From NCBI GenBank assembly GCA_000708835.1, contig DF237203.1, forward strand, positions 1-64,000: 64,000 nucleotides of DNA, written 5' to 3'. How positions within the stretch are numbered: the first letter of the stretch is position 1; the number at the start of each line of letters is the position of its first letter. The notes beneath the pieces are model-generated. The model was not told where the DNA came from. It saw only the letters and a program-made list of their open reading frames with translations, and ran no database searches. Below are positions 3,401 through 45,853 of this stretch, piece after piece. This DNA comes from Klebsormidium nitens. Its lineage: Eukaryota > Plantae > Klebsormidiophyceae. A program made the position numbers and the translations under genes.

Positions 3401-5700
3401 GGAAGCGCAAGTCACCCCTTAAAGAATAAGTGAATCAACTTGAGCATAGCATACTCACGATCAGAACGACGTGGTTCTTGCACGAAATACGCCCATCGGT
3501 TCGGTGAGGTGCTACCAACCGAAACTTCCCTTGAAGTAAGGTGCTGTCTGTCAGAGGCAGTGGTGCGTTGACCTGAACGCACAATTTGAGCGCGCATTTG
3601 ATTGTCATTTGATTGTCTTTGGTCATCCAGCTGACTGCATGTTCTCTTTGCTCGTTCAGAAGCATTCCGAGCACATCAAGAACGTCTTCCATTCGGACCT
3701 AGTTTAGTTTGCAAATCTATCCGAATCTTACAACACATGGAACTGAGGTTGGAGACCATCAACTGTCTGATCCCAAATTGCTTAGACGTCACATCAAACG
3801 TTCTCAATGTGCTTTCGTTTAACATCCGTACTTGTAAGTCAAGTACTCTAGCAAACGACTCTTGCAAACAAGCAGGTTGAGTTGGCCATGGTACGGCCGA
3901 TCTGTTTCACCGTCCGCTTTTGGAGCTCAATCTCAAGAAACTCTTGCGGCCTTGCCCAGGGACCCGAGCATTGGGAGCCGCTTCTCCGCTTGGCCGTGTA
4001 CGTGGCGGAGTACACGCCCTTTGAAAAACGAGCTATTGTAACGGCCCAGTCGATGTTGAAGGACGTTTTGGCTTACGACGAGGCGGTCCAGAGGCTTTCG
4101 CCCGTCCCGCATCCTCAGGCGAATGGAGCGAGTGACCGCGACACTGAAGATTCTGCAACTTTTCAAAGAGGTCACCTGTTGATGGGGCACATCAAGGCAA
4201 TCAGCTACGTGGCCACGAGCGAATCCTGCAGGAGGACGAGCATTACACGCTGAGGGATCCCACGGACCGATCTCGCAAATGTCTCGAGCTCCACGACGCT
4301 GGCCACAAAAAAAAGAAGGAACCGGGGCTGAGAACTTCTTCAAAAGCAGAGCCAACAGATCAAGCATAGGTCGAACAGGCAATACTACGAAGACAAAGGC
4401 AAATTCCGCTTACGCGATTGAAGAGGTTACGACAACTGCTACGGTTGCCATTTTTGCGACACTTAGAAACGGACTATGAGGCTGCTATCATATGTGCTCG
4501 GATATGCTATACTCCTTATGCTCGAAAAGCAAAAAGTTTCTCGCTGAAGCTCGGCTTCACCAACGACGCGGAAAAGTTCTATGCGGAGTACGGGATCTCG
4601 ACACGCAAAGAGTGGGCGTGCAAGGCGGGGCCCACTCCGTAGTGGCGAGAGTATAACTGGAGGAGAGAGGATAGAGAGCGTTTGAAGCGTTTGAAAGGGC
4701 TCCCGCGCATGCAGGCCGGACCGAGAATCAAGACCAAGAGGGCCGCCCTCTAGCCGGCCACAACGGCAAAGGAATTTGGTAGAGTCGACATGACCGCCGC
4801 GCTTGATACCAACGATTGATTGTTAGCTCTCGGGGTAGCTGATCTGTGCCACAGATTGGCGTATGGGCACAATATTGATGTGACGTGATTAAGGGAGTTA
4901 ATGTTAATCACGCCGCCGAAACGTTCGTAGAGGGCAAGATAGTAAATGCTTGGTTAGCAACGTGACGTTTGCGGACAGCATGATCTTGCGAGACTATGAC
5001 ATGACCAGGGTGGCTTGGCATGGTGCATCATGCCAGCGCGAAAGCTACTCTGTGGTCGTAAGTATGCTCCCGAAGTAGCCGGACGAAGGTCTTATACGTG
5101 ACTAGATGCAGGCTTGGGCAATGCTCGAAGACCGCCTCTCTATGATGCGGAACTTCGCTGAACGCGAACAGGAGCAAGAGCTAGAATTAAACTTGCGGGG
5201 ATCCTTGGAGACAAATCCCAACCAGCAAGCAGAATTGTCTTGAGAGGAAAGACATCGTTTTTACAGAGTTGCGCCTTCGTTCAAGAACGGGCCTGCAACC
5301 ATGGTTCCCGCACATGACTGCTGTGACATATCGTGCCAGCGCTTCGCTGGCCAGACGTCACAAAGACAAAACGGGGTAGGGGCAGGGAGGCCGTCCCGCT
5401 TCCCACACCGCAGCTTGGGGCGACGCGCCGTAGGACTCACCGGGCATGACAGCCTCGTACACATCGTGCTGCAAGGTCGTCACATATCGATGATGGACAT
5501 TGGCCTTCCGGGCTGCGAAGCGATGGCGCTCCACTACCTCAGTGTCGTCCAAGGCAATGTATTGGTAAACATGTCGTCCGCCTTTATGACTGCATGACGC
5601 AGCTAGGACTTATTGACGGTATTGAGCTTGGGGCACCAGGCGCTGCTCCAGGGTTTGCTGTCACGGTCGTTGGTCTCTATCTGAGTTGGCGTTGATGTTG
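489..5700. pseudogene. Decayed coding-like region of unknown origin (possible old TE or gene relics)
   Basis: Short protein-like frames are broken by stops and frameshifts. Examples: minus 629-489 EIWFKSDELFKYAKALEEGKALVLANA*DTMVQARLIVAYSSHNGL*, and plus 2959-3240, 3882-4253 and 4418-4642. No consistent exon chain and no recognisable domain. Boundaries are approximate. Confidence 0.3.
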
Positions 5701-15640: not shown

Positions 15641-15677
15641 TAGGGTTTGCTGTGATTGAAGGCTGTTTTTAGGGTTT
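15641..15677. promoter_or_regulatory. Two telo-box motifs in the LAG1/PPR divergent promoter
   Basis: TAGGGTTT at 15641-15648 and TTTAGGGTTT at 15668-15677 (reverse complement of AAACCCTA). Confidence 0.5.
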
Positions 15678-28100: not shown

Positions 28101-30055
28101 CGAGACCTCGAGACGAGGCCTGCAATGACTGCCTGGATTAGGCGGACACGGAGCGTTAATTAACTGTCTTCTACCTGCAGAGATCGAGGCGGGCAACGCG
28201 GACGTGCTGGCTGCTGCGCGGCGCGTGGGCCACTACCCGGAGGACGAGACGCCCAAGGACGCCAAGGAGCTGGCGGGCCGCCTCTTCTACACCGTCTACA
28301 TGGGCACCGAAAACAGGTGCGCGCCTCGCCAGCCGCAATACTTCTGTCGAATCTGGCACTCCTTACCAGCGCTGTCTTCAATGCATCCTTCACTCGAAGC
28401 TTGTGGTGTGCTAGCCCTTCCGCGGCCTTCCCTTGCCCCGTGACGAAGCGTGTTGTCTTCACGGGCCTGACTTGTTGCACTGTGAGGTGCAGTTCCGCCG
28501 CGACCAAGAAGCGCGCTGCGAAGCTGGCCGCGGAGATCGGCGCGACGCACCACGCGGTGGTCATCGACACCGTCGTGTCCGCGCTCACCACGCTCTTCCA
28601 GGTCATGACCGGCAAGCGGCCGCGCTACAAGGTGCGCACGGCCGCACTGCTTTGCCGCGTGCCCTGACCGCAGTCACTAACTGTTCGCCTCATGAACCTT
28701 CGAAGCATCGCGTTGCTGAATGTGGCCGCTCTGCTGAGGTATGTTTCGTTTCGTTTTGTTTTGTTTTCGCTCCCCTCTTGGAGCGTGTCCCCTGTGCGTG
28801 ACGCCTCGGCTGCGCGCGCGCAGGTGGACGGCGGGAGCGTGACGGAGAACCTGGCGCTGCAGAACATCCAGGCGCGGCTGCGCATGGTGCTGGCGTTTTT
28901 GCTGGCGCAACTGCTGCCGTGGGTGTACTCCCGCCCCGGCTTCCTGCTCGTGCTGGGCAGCGCCAACGTGGACGAGGGCCTGCGCGGCTACCTCACCAAG
29001 TACGACTGCAGCAGCGCGGACGTGAACCCCATCGGCGGCATCTCCAAGCAGGACCTGCGCCGCTTCCTGCAGTGGGGCGCGGTCCACCTGGGCTACCCCG
29101 CGCTCGCGGAGGTGGAGGCCGCGCCGCCCACCGCGGAGCTGGAGCCCATCCGCGAGAACTACGTGCAGACGGACGAGGCCGACATGGGCATGACGTACGA
29201 GGAGCTCAGCCTGTACGGCCGCCTGCGCAAGATCTACCGCTGCGGGCCCGTCTCCATGTTCCAGCACCTCTGCCACCGCTGGCAAGGTGAGCGCACCCCG
29301 GCCGAGCCGGCACGTTGCCCGGGGACATGTTCCGACGTGATTTGGAGGGGCGAGGACATATTGGCAAAGGCTAACTCTGCTTATCAATGCCTTGCTGCAT
29401 TTCTCGGTGATACTTTTTACGTTGCCCTCTATGAGGCTGCTCGATTCGGCCCTGCCCCATCTGACGCCTGAGCCGTGTGGTTGGGTGCGCGTGCAGGCAA
29501 GCTGTCGCCTGCGGAGGTGGCGGGCAAGGTGAAGGACTTCTTCCGTTTCTACTCCATCAACCGCCACAAAATGACCACGCTCACGCCCTCTTACCACGCC
29601 GAGGTGAGCCCCCCAGCCCGCACAATCCTGTAATCTGCTGGGAACCCTCTTTCCGGACTCTCTTTTGAGCTCTTTTGCTTTTTCCACGGTGCTTCTTTGT
29701 ACGCTCACCTTTTTGCTGGCCTTTGCATTCGCAGAACTACAGCCCCGAGGACAACCGGTTCGACCTGCGCCAGTTCCTGTACAACGTGCGCTGGCCGTGG
29801 CAGTTCCGCAAAATTGACGAGCTCGTAGCGCGCTCGGCCGCCGCCAGCGGGGGCCCCGCCACCGCGCAGCACACCGCGCTGCCGCCGTCCCTGCTGGGCG
29901 AGCTCACCAATGCGGAGCGCGCGGGGGTGGACGTGGACAGCGCGGGGGGCGTCCCGGCCGCGGGGGCAGGACCGCCTCAAACAGTGGAGGCAGTGCACCC
30001 GTCGCGGGCTGCACGGAGCCACCCAGGGGTAGCGAGCAATCACAGCAGGAATTGA
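25120..30055 (+). CDS. QNS1: Glutamine-dependent NAD+ synthetase
   Basis: Twelve exons: 25120-25313, 25611-25746, 25935-26219, 26551-26662, 26803-26906, 27433-27570, 27734-27902, 28181-28316, 28493-28631, 28824-29286, 29497-29603, 29735-30055. Nitrilase triad GPELE / RPKL / ETCEE, PP-loop [24 protein letters not shown] and [16 protein letters not shown]. Confidence 0.97.
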
Positions 30056-30996: not shown

Positions 30997-33281
30997 TCAG
31001 GCCGCTGCCTGCTCAAGTACGTCAACTTCTTTCGACTCCCCCATCTCGTACTTTGTCCTTCCGGGATGCGCCAACAAGCCACCCCCTAAACATACATCAC
31101 CATCGTATAGCACCAAAGCCTGCCGTGGCGTCAACGCCCGCTCGCTCTCCTTGAACCTCACGAGCAGACGTTTGTGGACGGCCCCCTCCTTTTCGGCCAG
31201 CTCCGGAATGTCGACTCGGCTGAAGCTACTCTTCTCGAACCCCCGGCAACTCCGCATCCCTGCTCGCCCCTCCACCAGCCTGACTGTGCACTCCCCCATC
31301 CGTTGCACGTACCTTGCCTTGTACGAGCACACCATCTCTCGCCCGTCCAGCAGTTCCCGTGGTGGCCGCCCCGTGACCCAGAACAGCGGCGCCACCAGTG
31401 CTGTGTCCGAGTATAGCGCAGGGTGGTCCTCCCCGCGGGCCACAAACACAGCATTGTCGCCCACAGATTTCCCGACCACGAACCAGGGCAGAGCCGAACC
31501 TCCGATGCGTGCACGCTGCCCGTTGGTGTACGCCGCAAGCCCGCCATGCGTGCCGACCGGGCGCCCGTCCCCGACGTTCACAAACGGGCCTGGCTGCAGC
31601 GGCACGTACTGCGCAATGAAGCGCTCAAAGCGGCGCTTGCCCAAGAAGCAGATGCCGCGGCTGCTGCGCTTGTTCGCAACCAGCAGGCCTGCATCTGTCG
31701 CCAGCTGGCGCACTTCGCTCTTGAGGGAGCCACCCACCGGGAATAGCACACGCTCCAAAGGGGCGCTCTCCTGCAGAGAAGACAGCCTGGTGAGCAACTG
31801 CAGCTGTGTCGAGCTTTATCACCTGGTGGATTATCGGGAGCCGTGGCACAGACAGCCGCTCGAACTGCTCGATAATCTCTAAGAACTCGGAAGTCAAAAG
31901 CGATATTTGTTGAACACATTTACTTTTTTGAAAGATCTATAGGAAGCGTTACCTTCAGGATGGGGGGCCCTCGCGTCTCAGCTTTCTTTTCGCAGGCTCG
32001 TGATTGCGGGGCTGCTCTGTAGCTGGCTTACCACTTGTGCCAGGAAGTAGCTCTGGTCCTTGGTCGGGTCCTTGCCCCGCAGCAGGCGCCGCGCCCCGCC
32101 CTCCCCCTCCGAGTCGAGGCGTGCGTAGTGGCCGGTGGCCAGCAGGTCGGCCCCCTGGGCGAGCGCGTGGTGCAGCAGGGCGTCGAACTTGATGTGGCGG
32201 TTGCAGGGCAGGTCCGGGTTGGGGGTCAGGCCGCGCGCACACTCGGCCACAAATTGCTCAAACACGTCCGTCCAGTAGCGCCGCACAAAGTCCACCTCGT
32301 GCAGCGGGATGCCTGCGATGGAAGGAGGGGGGTGGAACAGGGAACGGGAACTCAAGCAACCACGGCGAGCTGTGTCCCAAACCCGCCAGGTTTGGTCCCA
32401 GAACCGTCATCTCCGAAGCGAGTCTCATTCTTGAAAACTTCAACGCCGTGCAAAAGCGCTCAGCTTCGGTTGAATGAGTGCTTTCCACGAATGACAGAAG
32501 ATGACAAATGGATATTTGGTAGATCACGCCAATATGTCCAGTTTTGTTTCTTGCACGGCCCCAGAATCTCGCAAGATCCAGGATCTAGGATGCACCACTT
32601 CACTTCTGCAGTATCTTGGCCACTGACTATAAGTCGACCCTTGGCTTAATAAAGAGGAGGCCAGCGAGCAAAATATCGCTTGCTTAGAACATCAAAAGCA
32701 ACTGGGCACATGGAGATGGCCTCACCAAGATGCGCGCACGCTTGTTTGGCGTCCTTGAGGTCCTGGTCCGCCGAGCACTGCCCCGCGTCGTCCTCCTCCT
32801 GTGCATCCCAGTTGCGCATAAACAGCCCCACCACCTCGTACCCTGCCCGCTGCAGCAGCAGTGCGCTCACCGCTGAGTCCACGCCCCCCGACATGCCCAC
32901 CGCCACCACCGGCCGACGCTTGCCAGGCGAGGCGACAGGGAAGGACGTGGGGCCAGGAGGGGGGGAGGTTTGGACGCCCCTGGTGGCCAAGGGTACATAA
33001 TTTGGACTGAAAGAAGGGCGGAAAGCAGCAGCGCACCTGCTGCCCCAGGCTCCAACAAGGGCTTCACTCCGGGTGGGGAGAGCGAGGGGGCCGTGAGATG
33101 AATCCTTGGCGCTGTGCCACAGAATATTGGCAGCTGATGAGAACAGGCCCTGGAGCGAGGGGCTCTTGGGACTAAGCACTGTCGCCCCATTGACTTGCAG
33201 GTTTGGCGGGAGCTTCTGTTCCAAACGTTTGCTCAAAAGGTTGCGGAGCAGAGACGCTGAGCGGGGCGCCAATGACTTCAT
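30997..33281 (-). CDS. mnmA: tRNA-specific 2-thiouridylase MnmA/TRMU, organelle-targeted
   Basis: Exons 33281-32726, 32312-32032, 31770-30997. Motifs [43 protein letters not shown] and SRGICFLG. The start is the first in-frame ATG (MKSLAPRS...). Confidence 0.95.
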
Positions 33282-33347
33282 TTCAATATGCGCCCCTGTT
33301 CCCACCACCACTTGGTGCCTTAATATGGTGTCTAACACAGCCACCAC

Positions 33348-34005
33348 TCAACCCTGCTTCTTGTCTTCTGGCAAAGGCTGGGGAGGTCCCACATCGGTGG
33401 CTCCAGGGGTCTCAAAGAGGGCCTTGGCCTGCTCTTCCGCTGAAACGAGCCCTGTCTCAGCAATGAACCTGCACAACGGGCATGGAAAGATGAAAAGATT
33501 GCCTGCCAAGGAACGAATTTTTTTTCGAAGTAGCCATCACAACAACCGGTAGGAAGCGTAAGAGGAGGACCAGAACACATAGTTTTTGCCAAACTTTACA
33601 TCACCAACAGGTAGATGATCTACTGCATGAGCGAGGACGAGGTCTCTGACGAGGTCTCCAATCATGCTTCATAACGAAGCAAACAGCCATTTTTTTGTAC
33701 CACCGAGTCTCCTTCAAGCAGATTTACACTGACCACAGCAAAGGATGCGCTACAGGCATTGCAGCACCACCTCACCAGTTGAGCAGGCCAAGTAGCGCCA
33801 CCGCACACAGGACCAGGACGATGACGTGAATGACCAAAAACACGTCGTACCCTTGCGCCACCACCGCAAGAAAAGCCAGCACGATGACAAGGGCCACCCC
33901 GGCAACATTCAAAAGGATAAAAGTCGAATGATTAACACCCTCGGAGACAGCTCCTATAAGAACGTCCTCAAACCAGGAGCTTCTGTTTGGGCGCTGCGAG
34001 GCCAT
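33348..34005 (-). CDS. Small ER membrane protein, Pkr1-like (V-ATPase assembly factor family), 116 aa
   Basis: Exons 34005-33776 and 33468-33348 with a GT-AG intron. The protein MASQRP...SEGVNHSTFILLNVAGVALVIVLAFLAVV...VIHVIVLVLCAVALLGLLNWFIAETGLVS... has two hydrophobic helices followed by W-F-I-x-E, as in Pkr1. The family call is recalled similarity. Confidence 0.75.
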
Positions 34006-34113: not shown

Positions 34114-34158
34114 TTAGGGTTTAGGGTTTGCTTCCCAGGACTTGAAAAATTAGGGTTC
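34114..34158. promoter_or_regulatory. Telo-box cluster in the Pkr1-like/unknown-gene divergent promoter
   Basis: TTAGGGTTTAGGGTTT at 34114-34129 and TTAGGGTTC near 34150-34158. Confidence 0.6.
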
Positions 34159-37741: not shown

Positions 37742-40084
37742 CTAAGGACGACTTCCGTATGTTGCTGGTAGGCAAGAATCCCTATCGAGCAACCCGTCCT
37801 TGGACAGGAAATATTGCCGGAACCTCTGCCGCGAGTACTCCGCATAATCAAACTCAATGTTGGATGAAGCGCTGAAAATAACGCCCCACAGCCCCCACTG
37901 CAGGTGGCTCACCAGAGTGAAGCGGTCCGCCTCCTTTACTAACGAGGCAACATCCTCCGCCGAAGGGTTGTCACCTGTTCAGACGCCAAAACAAGTTTGA
38001 GCTCCTTGTTCAAACGTGCATGCAAGAGCCATTGCCTTCCACTATAAAAGTCCACTAACTGATGTCAAAATGCAGCGCCAGCCGATCCATTTGACTCAAC
38101 CGCATAGTAGATAGCCGCTTAATGGCAGGCTACCAGACTTTGTAAGGCCCTGGTATAGGCTCTCGCATCAACTGTTCCCAGTGCACAATCTGACCCGAGA
38201 GGGCTGCAACACATTGCCCGCAAATGTCCAAGAGCCCTAACCCTCACCACTACGTAAAATCGACGACCTTTCAATCGCCCATTGGGGTCATTGAAACTGA
38301 ATGCACTAGGCCATTTAACCGTGAAAGCGGCTGCTATCTGCACGCCTTCCTCAGCTCTTTCCCTCACCTAATGCGGAGAGGTATGCTTGACAGAAGCGCA
38401 GGCGCTGCTCCAGAGAGGGGTAGCGGGAGTAGTCGAGAATGTGGGGGGTGTCAGAGTGGTAGTCAGCGGCAAACTCGCAAAAGTGATTGGCGATGTCGAA
38501 CGCGATCGGGTTGTAGCCTGCGTACTCGTAATCCTGCAAGCCAGGGCCCCTTGTATCAACACCGCACACTTCGCAGACAGACCCCTTCACGCCGATGCGT
38601 GGGCTGTTTTGGGGGGACTTCTCAAATCTGGTCGAAAGCAGAGCAAACCGGAAGATCACCCAGAAAATCGCACTGCGCACCAAGGCTGTGAGGGAGCCTT
38701 ACAGAGCTTGTAAAGGCCAGACCCGCATCTTTGCAAAGAGCAGATTCGCATGACACCCCTGTTGACAGGGTGTACATCAGGACCCTGTCTTTCTTTACTA
38801 AGGCCTGCCTCAGGTGTGGTCAACAGATGCCGCAGCATTATGTTAGGCAAGCGTCAGCCCGAGATTTTTGGTGCTTGTTTGCTCTGCACTGCAATGCGGG
38901 TGTGACGACTCACAATAATTGTGATGGCCCCCGTGCGCTCATCTGCCATGAGGTTGCCATACTGCAAGTCGTTGTGGCAGAAACCAATGCCCCATCTAGA
39001 GCGCCCTGCCGCCTGCAGCTTGTCTTGAGCCGCAGCTCTGCTGACCCCCGTGCAGTGCCCCTTTCCACCCTCATCTCCACTCCCCACTTCCGTCACTGTC
39101 CGTTCCGCAAAACTTCCAGTAGCCGCCTCGCCCCCTTCCTCATTGTGCCCCCCCAGCTTTGCCTCCATCTCCGCAATCTCCTCCTCCAGCTCTGCCAGGC
39201 AAAATTCCGCTGCTGCCAGGGGTGAGGCCACCTCCAGGGCCGTGAGCAGCCAGGCACGCATGCGCGGCCACACAACGGCGCTACGTGGGGCGCCCATGTC
39301 AAGGCGGTGAAAGACGGCCAGCTTGGCAGCAATGCGGGCGGAGCACACAGGGTCCCGCAAGTCCGGCGACGTCAGCGTCTGCAAGGAAGTGCTCCAGGCT
39401 CAGGCGCGCGGCTGGCACTCTGCTGTAAGAAGACGGAGTAGCACAAGCAGTTGCAAATGCCTCACCTTTCTTCAATTAGAATGCGGGCACCCTGGAACCG
39501 GAAGACGAAATAGGAAAGACCTTCTCGAGCCCAAACAGAAGTTTCCAGCATCCCCTGCGGAAGTACTTCAGACAGATATTACAAAGGGCCGAGCTTTTAC
39601 CGTCAAGAAAAGCAAAACCCTTGGCCAAATGCTCACGAAAGGTGCTAAATAACAAGAAAGTTGTACGCACCCTCGCATGCAGCCACTCCTCAACTCTGCC
39701 CGCAGGAAAATGTGCCAAAAGCTGGGGGCCGTAGCCATGCCGGGACAGCCGTTCGAACGTCTCTACTTCTTGCTCTCTGCTAAAGATGGCGTCCACTTCA
39801 CTGCCGTACAGCCGCACGAGGACCCGCCGGCTCTTCCCGCTCGGTTCTCGCCACTTGCACTCAAACACCTTATTGGTCAGAGCACCACTCAGCCGCTTCA
39901 CAGAGATCTCCCCCACGTCGCGCAGGGCTTCCTGCCACTCCTGGGAGGAAATCTTTTGCAAAGCGGGCAGGGCCACTTGTGCGACCTCCGCCAGGTCAAC
40001 CTCGTCAGAGGAAAACAAGGGCAATGATGGGGGCCCCGTAGGAAACGACTGCAAACTCGGGTGGAGGGTCTCAATCCCCCCCAT
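37742..40084 (-). CDS. Choline/ethanolamine kinase
   Basis: Exons 40084-39671, 39378-38914, 38533-38368, 37974-37742. Motifs LSGALTN, VLVRLYG, Brenner motif [42 protein letters not shown] and EFDYAEY. The start could lie further upstream. Confidence 0.93.
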
Positions 40085-40221
40085 GCTGCTTCCCAACCCT
40101 CCTACCTGCTACCTTGAGGGTTCTAGACACCCTTTGACACACTACCTAGCCTGCTGACTAGCGCCAGGCGCCCTGATTTCTACCCTGCACGGCTCAAGAG
40201 TCAATGGCGCCTCTCTCCCTG

Positions 40222-45830: not shown

Positions 45831-45853
45831 TAAACCCTAAAGTGGAACCCTAA
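45831..45853. promoter_or_regulatory. Telo-boxes in the rpl36/RPI4 divergent promoter
   Basis: TAAACCCTAAA at 45831-45841 and AACCCTAA at 45846-45853. Telo-boxes are typical of plant ribosomal-protein promoters. Confidence 0.65.

What the first reader, a model, noticed from the sequence alone, without database searches (positions are those of the whole stretch)
30997..34005. Candidate bicistronic (or obligatorily overlapping) Pkr1-like + MnmA unit with a 66-nt in-frame spacer
Seen in the sequence: the Pkr1-like stop (TGA, 33350-33348) is only 66 nt upstream of the first in-frame MnmA ATG (33281), on the same strand. The spacer contains no ATG and is an open, in-frame stretch of 22 codons. It is far too short for a 3'UTR, polyA site and promoter, given that the other convergent gene pairs here are separated by about 1-3.6 kb. 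ORF1 is short (116 aa) and has no internal Met. This is also the only co-oriented neighbouring host-gene pair in the window; treating it as one unit restores perfect strand alternation. Established: nuclear polycistronic loci with a short ORF1 and a short inter-ORF gap are known in chlorophyte algae such as Chlamydomonas and Chromochloris. Inference: this may be such a locus in a streptophyte-like alga, translated by leaky scanning or reinitiation, or by TGA readthrough giving a fusion. Against leaky scanning: the ORF1 start has a strong context (AAG ATG G) and two out-of-frame ATGs lie within ORF1.
Basis: partly seen in the sequence, partly recalled or inferred. Interest (0 to 1): 0.75.

Follow-up and report, generated by a model that had tools for sequence, protein, structure and literature searches.

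The report
Ancient Pkr1-like–MnmA two-gene unit
In this Klebsormidium-type alga a small membrane-protein gene ends 66 bases before the start of a mitochondrial tRNA-modifying enzyme gene, and the same tight pairing recurs across distant green algae, so the two are most likely made from one messenger RNA, a known arrangement in green algae but barely documented in the relatives of land plants.

Summary
On the minus strand, a 2-exon, 116-codon Pkr1-like ORF stops (TGA 33350-33348) 66 nt before the only usable ATG (33281) of a 3-exon mitochondrial-type MnmA.

The in-frame, stop-free spacer is chance. In three related Klebsormidium-type loci the gap is 76, 39 and 29 nt and is out of frame or holds stops, so a readthrough fusion is rejected.

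The same oriented pair occurs in about nine further algal lineages, with gaps from -1 to 157 nt. These include the chlorophyte Monoraphidium minutum, where the stop and start overlap as TGATG. An Iso-Seq-curated Auxenochlorella bicistron has the same layout: a 96-codon ER/TM ORF1, 42 nt, then mitochondrial MnmA. Its ORF1 sequence could not be obtained to test homology.

ORF1 is under purifying selection (dN/dS 0.10-0.31). A conserved telobox cluster lies only upstream of ORF1.

Best reading (about 0.7): one bicistronic mRNA, with MnmA translated by ribosomes that bypass ORF1. No RNA evidence for this locus could be obtained. ORF1 also has a strong start context in Klebsormidium-type algae, so the mechanism is inferred.

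This is a new member of a known kind. Other agents of this scan already report about 22 bicistron candidates in this genome.

The parts
34114..34157 (-). Cluster of three telobox motifs (AACCCTAA), 109-152 nt upstream of the ORF1 ATG; the likely promoter region of the unit
   Evidence: 6 matches in the window against 0.84 expected, three of them here; the same cluster lies 109-218 nt upstream of ORF1 in L001, L002 and L013, and none lies between the ORF1 ATG and the MnmA ATG.
33776..34005 (-). ORF1 (Pkr1-like) exon 1, from the ATG at 34005; ends in phase 2 inside a Trp codon (TG|G)
   Evidence: Pfam Pkr1 is the best hit (E = 0.0012, 19.4 bits, below the 27.7 cutoff). 92% identical to L001. dN/dS 0.10-0.22 against relatives.
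33469..33775 (-). ORF1 intron (GT..AG, 307 nt)
   Evidence: The position and phase are shared with L001, L013, L002 and L003. There is no sequence block conserved across all four Klebsormidium-type introns.
33348..33468 (-). ORF1 exon 2 (39 codons plus the G that completes Trp) and the TGA stop at 33350-33348
   Evidence: 87% identical to L001 and 64-67% to L013 and L002. dN/dS 0.15-0.27.
33282..33347 (-). Inter-ORF spacer, 66 nt; in frame, with no stop and no ATG
   Evidence: The spacer is 76, 29 and 39 nt in relatives, with stops or a frame shift. The sequence is not conserved beyond the closest relative. Fold z-score -1.5.
32726..33281 (-). MnmA exon 1: ATG 33281, about 125 residues of presequence-like N-terminus, then the start of the HUP/P-loop domain
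   Evidence: PF03054, E = 3e-18, residues 126-185..
32032..32312 (-). MnmA exon 2 (HUP domain, includes the PCN cysteine motif)
   Evidence: PF03054, E = 2.6e-32.
30997..31770 (-). MnmA exon 3 (end of the HUP domain with the GICF cysteine motif, PRC-barrel and C-terminal barrel) and the TGA stop at 30999-30997
   Evidence: PF20259, PF20258 and PF03054; 8113 homologues; tree.

Best explanation
The stretch 34157-30997 (minus strand) is one transcription unit.

1. A telobox-type promoter upstream of ORF1 drives a single spliced mRNA that carries two cistrons.
2. ORF1 encodes a 116-residue Pkr1-like small membrane protein. By homology it is an ER protein of the V-ATPase assembly-factor family.
3. 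After 66 nt comes ORF2, a mitochondrial MnmA/MTU1-type tRNA 2-thiouridylase with an N-terminal presequence.
4. ORF2 is reached by scanning 40S subunits that skip the ORF1 AUG and the two weak-context out-of-frame AUGs (leaky scanning), possibly with some reinitiation.
5. The result is a low MnmA output coupled to ORF1.

Shown here: the anatomy, the coding status of both ORFs, the deep conservation of the tight oriented pair, and the position of the conserved promoter-like motifs. Inferred: co-transcription at this locus, and the translation mechanism.
For: (1) MnmA has no other possible AUG, so its start lies 66 nt after the ORF1 stop.

(2) The same oriented pair occurs as follows:
- L001: gap 76 nt
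- L013: gap 29 nt
- L002: gap 39 nt
- L003-5: gap 17 nt
- L006-8: gap 59 nt
- L011/12: gap 74 nt
- L014: gap 157 nt
- L015: gap 55 nt
- Monoraphidium minutum L016: overlapping TGATG
These are summarised.

(3) The MnmA tree puts L011 and L014 with Monoraphidium and Flechtneria (100/99) and the window in a separate Klebsormidium-type clade (100/99). The pair therefore spans Chlorophyta and Streptophyta.

(4) Duenas et al. 2024 (PMC11291117) list Auxenochlorella UTEX250_A02.02855 + UTEX250_A02.02850 among loci that Iso-Seq shows to be exclusively bicistronic. ORF1 is 291 nt, predicted ER/TM with no InterPro hit; the gap is 42 nt; ORF2 is mitochondrial MnmA. They also list Chlamydomonas Pkr1 (Cre03.g152505) as ORF1 of an obligatory bicistron.

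(5) ORF1 dN/dS is 0.10-0.31, and Pkr1 is the best Pfam hit in 8 of 10 ORF1s.

(6) The telobox cluster is conserved upstream of ORF1 in all four Klebsormidium-type loci and absent between the two starts. No conserved block exists in the ORF1 intron.

(7) The internal ATGs of the window and its relatives all sit in weak context, and the ORF2 AUG has a purine at -3 in 8 of 9 loci.
Against: - No transcript evidence for this locus was obtained. The protein database holds no spliced product of this species, and two metagenome scans were blank.
- The ORF1 AUG has a strong context (purine at -3, G at +4) in all four Klebsormidium-type loci, unlike the weak contexts reported for chlorophyte ORF1s and seen in L003, L006, L014 and L015.
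- ATG depletion upstream of ORF2 is not significant once codon usage is kept (P = 0.66).
- L001 and L002 carry ATGs whose ORFs overlap the MnmA start. L014 has 11 upstream ATGs and L015 has 7.
- Two MnmA introns downstream of the ORF1 stop would expose such an mRNA to nonsense-mediated decay (my inference).
- Homology of the Auxenochlorella ORF1 to this ORF1 could not be tested, because no sequence was available.
Confidence: 0.7

Rival explanations
1. There are two transcription units that overlap in tandem, or the locus is only facultatively bicistronic. MnmA has its own start site inside the ORF1 intron or exon 2, and ORF1 mRNAs are polyadenylated inside MnmA exon 1. The tight spacing then reflects a promoter embedded in ORF1.
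For: - No RNA evidence was obtained either way.
- The strong ORF1 start context would limit leaky scanning.
- Gallaher et al. report many loci with both mono- and polycistronic transcripts.
- A 20-nt block in the ORF1 intron is shared by the window and L001.
Against: - That intron block is absent from L013 and L002.
- Teloboxes occur only upstream of ORF1.
- Gaps of -1 and 17 nt in Monoraphidium and L003 leave no room for a separate leader outside ORF1.
- Keeping one orientation and a gap under 160 nt across chlorophytes and a streptophyte is hard to explain without co-transcription.
- The Auxenochlorella locus with the same layout was curated as exclusively bicistronic.
Confidence: 0.22
2. 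A single fusion protein is made, either by TGA readthrough across the in-frame 22-codon spacer or by alternative splicing that removes the ORF1 stop. The product would be a membrane-anchored MnmA.
For: - The spacer is in frame and stop-free in the window.
- One database protein, P0154 (436 aa, source unknown), joins a Pkr1-like N-terminus (residues 1-72) directly to MnmA.
Against: - In relatives the spacer is out of frame (L001, L013, L003, L006, L014, L015) or holds an in-frame stop (L002).
- ORF1 exon 2 and its stop position are conserved and under purifying selection.
- MnmA keeps its own presequence-like N-terminus.
- P0154 looks like a predicted model in which an invented intron skips the ORF1 tail.
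Confidence: 0.03
3. ORF1 is only a regulatory upstream ORF of MnmA, and its peptide has no function of its own.
For: The position and size resemble a long uORF. Pfam scores are below the Pkr1 cutoff.
Against: - dN/dS is 0.10-0.31 over both exons.
- Recognisable protein homology extends to chlorophyte ORF1s (BLASTP/tblastn E from 1e-7 to 1e-19).
- Pkr1 is the best Pfam family in 8 of 10 members.
- The nearest ESM Atlas clusters carry PF08636.
Confidence: 0.05

Closest known systems
Auxenochlorella protothecoides bicistronic locus UTEX250_A02.02855.1 / UTEX250_A02.02850.1 (Duenas et al. 2024, PMC11291117, supplements)
   Same: The order and orientation match. ORF1 is small (291 nt), predicted ER with a signal peptide or TM domain. 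The gap is short (42 nt). ORF2 is MnmA with a mitochondrial transit peptide. The authors curated it from Iso-Seq as exclusively bicistronic.
   Different: It is a trebouxiophyte, not a streptophyte. It has zero upstream ATGs, against two in the window. The authors found colinearity only in Prototheca cutis.
Chlamydomonas reinhardtii obligatory bicistron Cre03.g152505 (Pkr1, ORF1) / Cre03.g152500 (SET-domain protein, ORF2)
   Same: ORF1 is a Pkr1-family protein of about the same size (357 nt) with a similar gap (70 nt). It is listed as an obligatory polycistronic transcript and is conserved in Volvox by EST.
   Different: ORF2 is a plastid SET-domain methyltransferase, not MnmA. Orthology between this Pkr1 and the window's ORF1 was not tested.
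CDC26-TTM3 bicistronic transcript of plants and green algae
   Same: A small ORF1 lies upstream of an enzyme ORF2 on one mRNA, and the pair is conserved between chlorophytes and the streptophyte lineage. NMD is reported to act on the transcript (as summarised in PMC11291117).
   Different: The proteins are different, and CDC26-TTM3 has experimental RNA and protein evidence in Arabidopsis. Here there is none.
Pkr1 (PF08636), the fungal ER membrane V-ATPase assembly factor
   Same: The size is similar, with two hydrophobic segments and a conserved N-terminal motif. It is the best Pfam match in 8 of 10 ORF1 homologues, and the nearest ESM Atlas clusters carry PF08636.
   Different: Every score is below the Pfam gathering cutoff (best 24.5 against 27.7 bits). 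No functional or localisation data exist, and the conserved C-terminal tail (TG.VSA..Q...LF) is specific to the algal group.
MnmA / MTU1 (TRMU), tRNA 2-thiouridylase of bacteria and mitochondria
   Same: All three Pfam domains are present, along with the SGGxDS P-loop and both cysteine motifs (PCN and GICF).
   Different: The N-terminal extension is long and fast-evolving, about 125 residues and only 70% identical to the closest relative over exon 1. The gene sits as the second cistron.

Membership tests
Green-algal nuclear bicistronic locus (criteria of Gallaher 2021 and Duenas 2024) | Two complete ORFs on the same strand with a short inter-ORF distance | tested here: met
   The gap is 66 nt. 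Published gaps for the related loci are 42 and 70 nt.
Green-algal nuclear bicistronic locus (criteria of Gallaher 2021 and Duenas 2024) | Both ORFs found on one transcript, exclusively (Iso-Seq/EST) | not testable with these tools
   No transcript-derived product or contig of this species was found, and the look-up caps are exhausted.
Green-algal nuclear bicistronic locus (criteria of Gallaher 2021 and Duenas 2024) | Colinearity of the ORF pair conserved in other species | tested here: met
   About nine further lineages keep the pair, with gaps of -1 to 157 nt, including Monoraphidium minutum.
Green-algal nuclear bicistronic locus (criteria of Gallaher 2021 and Duenas 2024) | Weak Kozak-like context at ORF1 | tested here: not met
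   The context is A/G at -3 and G at +4 in the window, L001, L013 and L002. It is weak (pyrimidine at -3, no G at +4) in L003, L006, L014 and L015. The papers describe this as a tendency, not a strict criterion.
Green-algal nuclear bicistronic locus (criteria of Gallaher 2021 and Duenas 2024) | Under-representation of ATG upstream of ORF2 | tested here: inconclusive
   The window has 2 ATGs against 6.2 expected by base shuffling (P = 0.04), but P = 0.66 by codon shuffling. Across loci the count is 0 to 11.
Pkr1 (PF08636) | Score at or above the Pfam gathering cutoff (27.7 bits) | tested here: not met
   Scores are 16.7-24.5 bits. Pkr1 is still the best family in 8 of 10 members. The spliced full-length protein was not scanned; exons were scanned separately.
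Pkr1 (PF08636) | Small ER membrane protein with two TM segments that acts in V-ATPase assembly | not tested
   Two hydrophobic stretches are visible in alignment A3. No TM predictor or localisation tool was run, and function is not testable here.
MnmA/MTU1 tRNA 2-thiouridylase | HUP (PP-loop ATPase) domain plus PRC-barrel and C-terminal barrel domains | tested here: met
   PF03054 (E = 3e-18, 2.6e-32 and 1.7e-9 on the three exons), PF20259 (7.6e-15) and PF20258 (4.6e-11), all above their cutoffs.
MnmA/MTU1 tRNA 2-thiouridylase | SGGxDS P-loop and the two catalytic cysteines | tested here: met
   Read directly from the translations: [10 protein letters not shown] in exon 1, [12 protein letters not shown] in exon 2 and RGICFLG in exon 3. 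Assigning these to the E. coli catalytic cysteines rests on my knowledge of the family.
MnmA/MTU1 tRNA 2-thiouridylase | Mitochondrial targeting (for the MTU1-type eukaryotic enzyme) | not tested
   The N-terminus is basic, Ser/Leu-rich and has no acidic residue in the first 20 positions. No predictor is available. The Auxenochlorella counterpart is predicted to be mitochondrial.

The most novel reading that the evidence does not exclude
The Pkr1-like/MnmA bicistron dates back to the common ancestor of Chlorophyta and Streptophyta, roughly a billion years. In the Klebsormidium lineage, where ORF1 has a strong start context, MnmA would then be translated by something other than classic leaky scanning. 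Candidates are efficient reinitiation after a 116-codon ORF, or start-site selection coupled to ER targeting of ORF1. That would be a mode of second-cistron translation not yet described for cellular mRNAs.
Probability: 0.12. Interest if true: 0.8.

Novelty: new member of a known kind. Interest (0 to 1): 0.5.

Why it matters
Nuclear two-protein mRNAs are documented experimentally in chlorophyte algae and, for CDC26-TTM3, in plants. I found no paper on them in Klebsormidium.

This locus ties a streptophyte alga to a chlorophyte bicistron with the same layout. The pair has been kept with a tiny gap across the deepest split of green plants, so the linkage itself is probably under selection.

It also gives three practical results:
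- It names the unannotated ORF1 of the Auxenochlorella-type locus as Pkr1-like.
- It adds unannotated ORF1 genes in Klebsormidium and Monoraphidium.
- It offers a natural contrast for testing how the second cistron is translated: strong ORF1 start contexts in Klebsormidium-type algae against weak ones in chlorophytes.

Tried and rejected
- **Readthrough fusion.** Rejected, because the frame and stop-free state of the spacer are not conserved.
- **IRES-like or structured spacer.** The fold z-score is -1.5 and the spacer sequence is not conserved.
- **Internal promoter element in the ORF1 intron.** The only conserved block is limited to the two closest relatives.
- **Transcript evidence.** Protein searches with ORF1 exon 1, MnmA exon 1 and an ORF1 profile returned no spliced product of this species. 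A peptide-pattern scan and a splice-junction DNA pattern scan of metagenome contigs were both blank. A profile of all ORF1s was too divergent for the search for related loci.
- **SRA and sample identifiers.** They were not found in any paper.
- **Physcomitrium MnmA (P0123).** It had no genomic record, so the land-plant arrangement stayed untested.
- **Supplements of Gallaher 2021.** They are not held.
- **Prokaryote-type promoter/terminator scan.** Uninformative for a eukaryote.
- **Spliced proteins.** No database search or structure prediction was run with them. The exons were searched separately by reference. Joined coding sequences were used only inside scripts, to count ATGs and to compute dN/dS.
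Full report
**Observation.**

All features lie on the minus strand.
- The Pkr1-like ORF starts at ATG 34005. Its first exon ends at 33776 with a GT donor, inside a Trp codon (TG|G). A 307-nt intron follows, and exon 2 runs from 33468 to 33351 with TGA at 33350-33348.
- The next 66 nt (33347-33282) read as 22 sense codons in the same frame and hold no ATG. ATG 33281 then opens MnmA.
- MnmA has three exons: 33281-32726, 32312-32032 and 31770-31000, with the stop at 30999-30997. All three MnmA Pfam domains score above their cutoffs.
- The catalytic domain starts at residue 126 of exon 1. The only other in-frame Met upstream of it lies within the P-loop motif, so ATG 33281 is the only plausible AUG start.
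- ORF1 has 116 codons and no internal Met. Two out-of-frame ATGs lie in weak context.

**What the spacer does and does not say.**

The in-frame, stop-free state is not a signal. I estimate it is roughly a 1-in-7 event, and it is not conserved.
- In the closest relative (L001, a Logan genomic contig; ORF1 exon 1 is 92% identical), the spacer is 76 nt, out of frame, and contains TGA and TAA.
- In L013 it is 29 nt and out of frame.
- In L002 it is 39 nt with an in-frame TGA.

Readthrough to a fusion protein is therefore rejected. The spacer sequence is not conserved beyond L001, and its predicted fold is unremarkable (z = -1.5). What is conserved is only that the gap is very short.

**ORF1 is a real gene.**
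- Among the four Klebsormidium-type loci, dN/dS is 0.10-0.31 for both exons, with dS up to about 1.7.
- Pfam's Pkr1 family (PF08636) is the best match for 8 of 10 ORF1 homologues. Every score is below the gathering cutoff (best 24.5 against 27.7 bits).
- The nearest ESM Atlas clusters are 120-137-residue proteins, mostly from Streptophyta, that partly carry PF08636.
- Neither the single-exon search nor the profile search returned any near-identical protein of this species. As far as this collection shows, ORF1 is unannotated.

**The pair is old.** Starting from MnmA homologues and ORF1 homologues, I fetched genomic contexts.

A Pkr1-like ORF lies immediately upstream of MnmA, on the same strand, in these loci (boundaries and counts):

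| Locus | Gap (nt) | Notes |
|---|---|---|
| L001 | 76 | closest relative |
| L013 | 29 | Klebsormidium-type |
| L002 | 39 | Klebsormidium-type |
| L003-5 | 17 | ORF1 missed by the gene caller, which called an antisense ORF |
| L006-8 | 59 | marine, intronless; BLASTP E = 1e-7 to the window |
| L011/12 | 74 | three-exon ORF1 |
| L014 | 157 | |
| L015 | 55 | |
| L016 | -1 | Monoraphidium minutum GCA_025201885.1; unannotated ORF1 whose stop overlaps the annotated MnmA start as TGATG |

- The ORF1 intron sits at the same codon and phase in the four Klebsormidium-type loci and in L003. In L011 an intron follows the same Trp.
- No pair was found upstream of MnmA in a Prasinoderma coloniale-like contig (L017) or in L009/L010.

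An MnmA tree (22 rows, rooted on a fungus and a stramenopile) gives these groupings:
- The window, L001, L013 and L002 form one clade (100/99).
- L011 and L014 group with Monoraphidium and Flechtneria (100/99).
- L003, L006 and L015 are unplaced.

The pair therefore exists in both Streptophyta (Klebsormidium-type) and core Chlorophyta.

**Link to the literature.**

The supplements of Duenas et al. 2024 (PMC11291117) list two relevant loci.
- Among Auxenochlorella loci found by Iso-Seq to be exclusively bicistronic is UTEX250_A02.02855.1. It is ORF1: 291 nt, a 71-nt leader, no InterPro hit, predicted ER with a signal peptide or TM domain.
- It is followed after 42 nt by UTEX250_A02.02850.1, an MnmA with a mitochondrial transit peptide.
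- Chlamydomonas Cre03.g152505, annotated as Pkr1, is ORF1 of an obligatory bicistron whose ORF2 is a SET-domain protein.

The Auxenochlorella layout matches the window locus point by point, but I could not obtain its sequence to test homology.

Other literature points:
- The authors' experiments support leaky scanning.
- The same paper cites CDC26-TTM3 as a bicistron conserved between plants and green algae.
- I found no paper on nuclear bicistrons in Klebsormidium.

**Where the promoter is.**
- Three teloboxes (AACCCTAA) lie 109-152 nt upstream of the ORF1 ATG. The window holds 6 against 0.84 expected.
- The same cluster lies 109-218 nt upstream of ORF1 in L001, L002 and L013.
- No telobox lies between the ORF1 and MnmA starts in any of them.
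- The ORF1 intron has no block conserved in all four.

That teloboxes mark promoters of plant genes for translation and mitochondrial functions is from my own knowledge, not tested here.

**Mechanism and its weak points.**

I take the locus as one bicistronic mRNA (about 0.7). Leaky scanning is the most likely route to MnmA, with about even odds given the bicistron.

In favour:
- Only two intervening ATGs, both with a pyrimidine at -3 and T at +4.
- A purine at -3 of the MnmA AUG.

Against:
- The ORF1 AUG has a strong context in all four Klebsormidium-type loci, whereas L003, L006, L014 and L015 have weak ones.
- ATG depletion is not significant under codon shuffling.
- Some relatives carry ATGs whose ORFs overlap the MnmA start.
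- Termination at ORF1 upstream of two introns should invite nonsense-mediated decay, as reported for CDC26-TTM3. This is my inference.

**What is missing.**

There is no direct RNA evidence at this locus.
- Protein searches returned no spliced product of this species.
- Two metagenome scans, one of them for the spliced exon junction, were blank.
- The spliced proteins were never used in a search or a structure prediction. The exons were searched separately by reference.

Notes from this scan name the genome Klebsormidium nitens and list about 22 other bicistron candidates in it, several said to have RNA contig support. I did not check those claims.

**Verdict.**
- The bicistron reading is well supported by comparative data but not shown by RNA.
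- The readthrough option is refuted.
- This is a new member of a known kind. Its added value is that the pair is conserved across the chlorophyte-streptophyte split and that ORF1 can be named Pkr1-like.

Noticed in passing
P0154 (protein; sequence): A 436-residue database protein joins a Pkr1-like N-terminus (residues 1-72, 46% identical to the L014 ORF1) directly to MnmA and skips the ORF1 tail. It is either a gene-prediction artefact that fuses the two cistrons or a real spliced fusion in some chlorophyte. Its source could not be looked up.
   Followed up: partly
L016:3693-4003 (Monoraphidium minutum GCA_025201885.1, MU601503.1): An unannotated 102-codon Pkr1-like ORF ends in a TGA that shares its A with the annotated MnmA ATG (TGATG overlap).
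   Followed up: yes
L003:3548-3983 (also L004 and L005): The gene caller placed a 142-residue ORF on the opposite strand (3569-3997). tblastn shows instead a two-exon Pkr1-like gene on the MnmA strand, 17 nt upstream of MnmA.
   Followed up: yes
PMC11291117 supplements (Cre03.g152505 / Cre03.g152500): In Chlamydomonas a Pkr1-family protein is also the first cistron of an obligatory bicistron, but the second cistron is a plastid SET-domain protein. The small ORF may have kept its upstream position while the partner changed. Orthology was not tested.
   Followed up: no
window 15669-15676 (-) and 45833-45853 (+): Further telobox motifs (AACCCTAA), the second site holding two copies 13 nt apart. 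They may mark promoters of other genes in the window.
   Followed up: no
window 33263-33296 (-): A 7-bp G+C-rich stem (GGGGCGC/GCGCCCC) encloses the MnmA AUG in its loop in the predicted fold. The arms are not kept in L001, so it is probably chance.
   Followed up: partly
window 28692-29468 (+) and 39479-40096 (-): The neighbouring genes are an NAD synthase-domain gene that converges on MnmA and a choline/ethanolamine kinase gene upstream of ORF1. Choline kinase is also upstream in L001 and L002, so local synteny is kept within the group.
   Followed up: partly
L002:16220-20762: The related metagenome contig carries ORFs with a weak Replitron_HUH hit and retrotransposon gag/pol-type hits downstream of the MnmA locus.
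   Followed up: no
L014:2340-2344: A TGTAA motif, the chlorophyte poly(A) signal by my knowledge, lies about 30 nt before the end of a 2374-nt Logan contig. The contig starts 12 nt before ORF1 and holds both ORFs uninterrupted, so it may be an assembled bicistronic transcript. The run type (SRR6371230) could not be established.
   Followed up: partly
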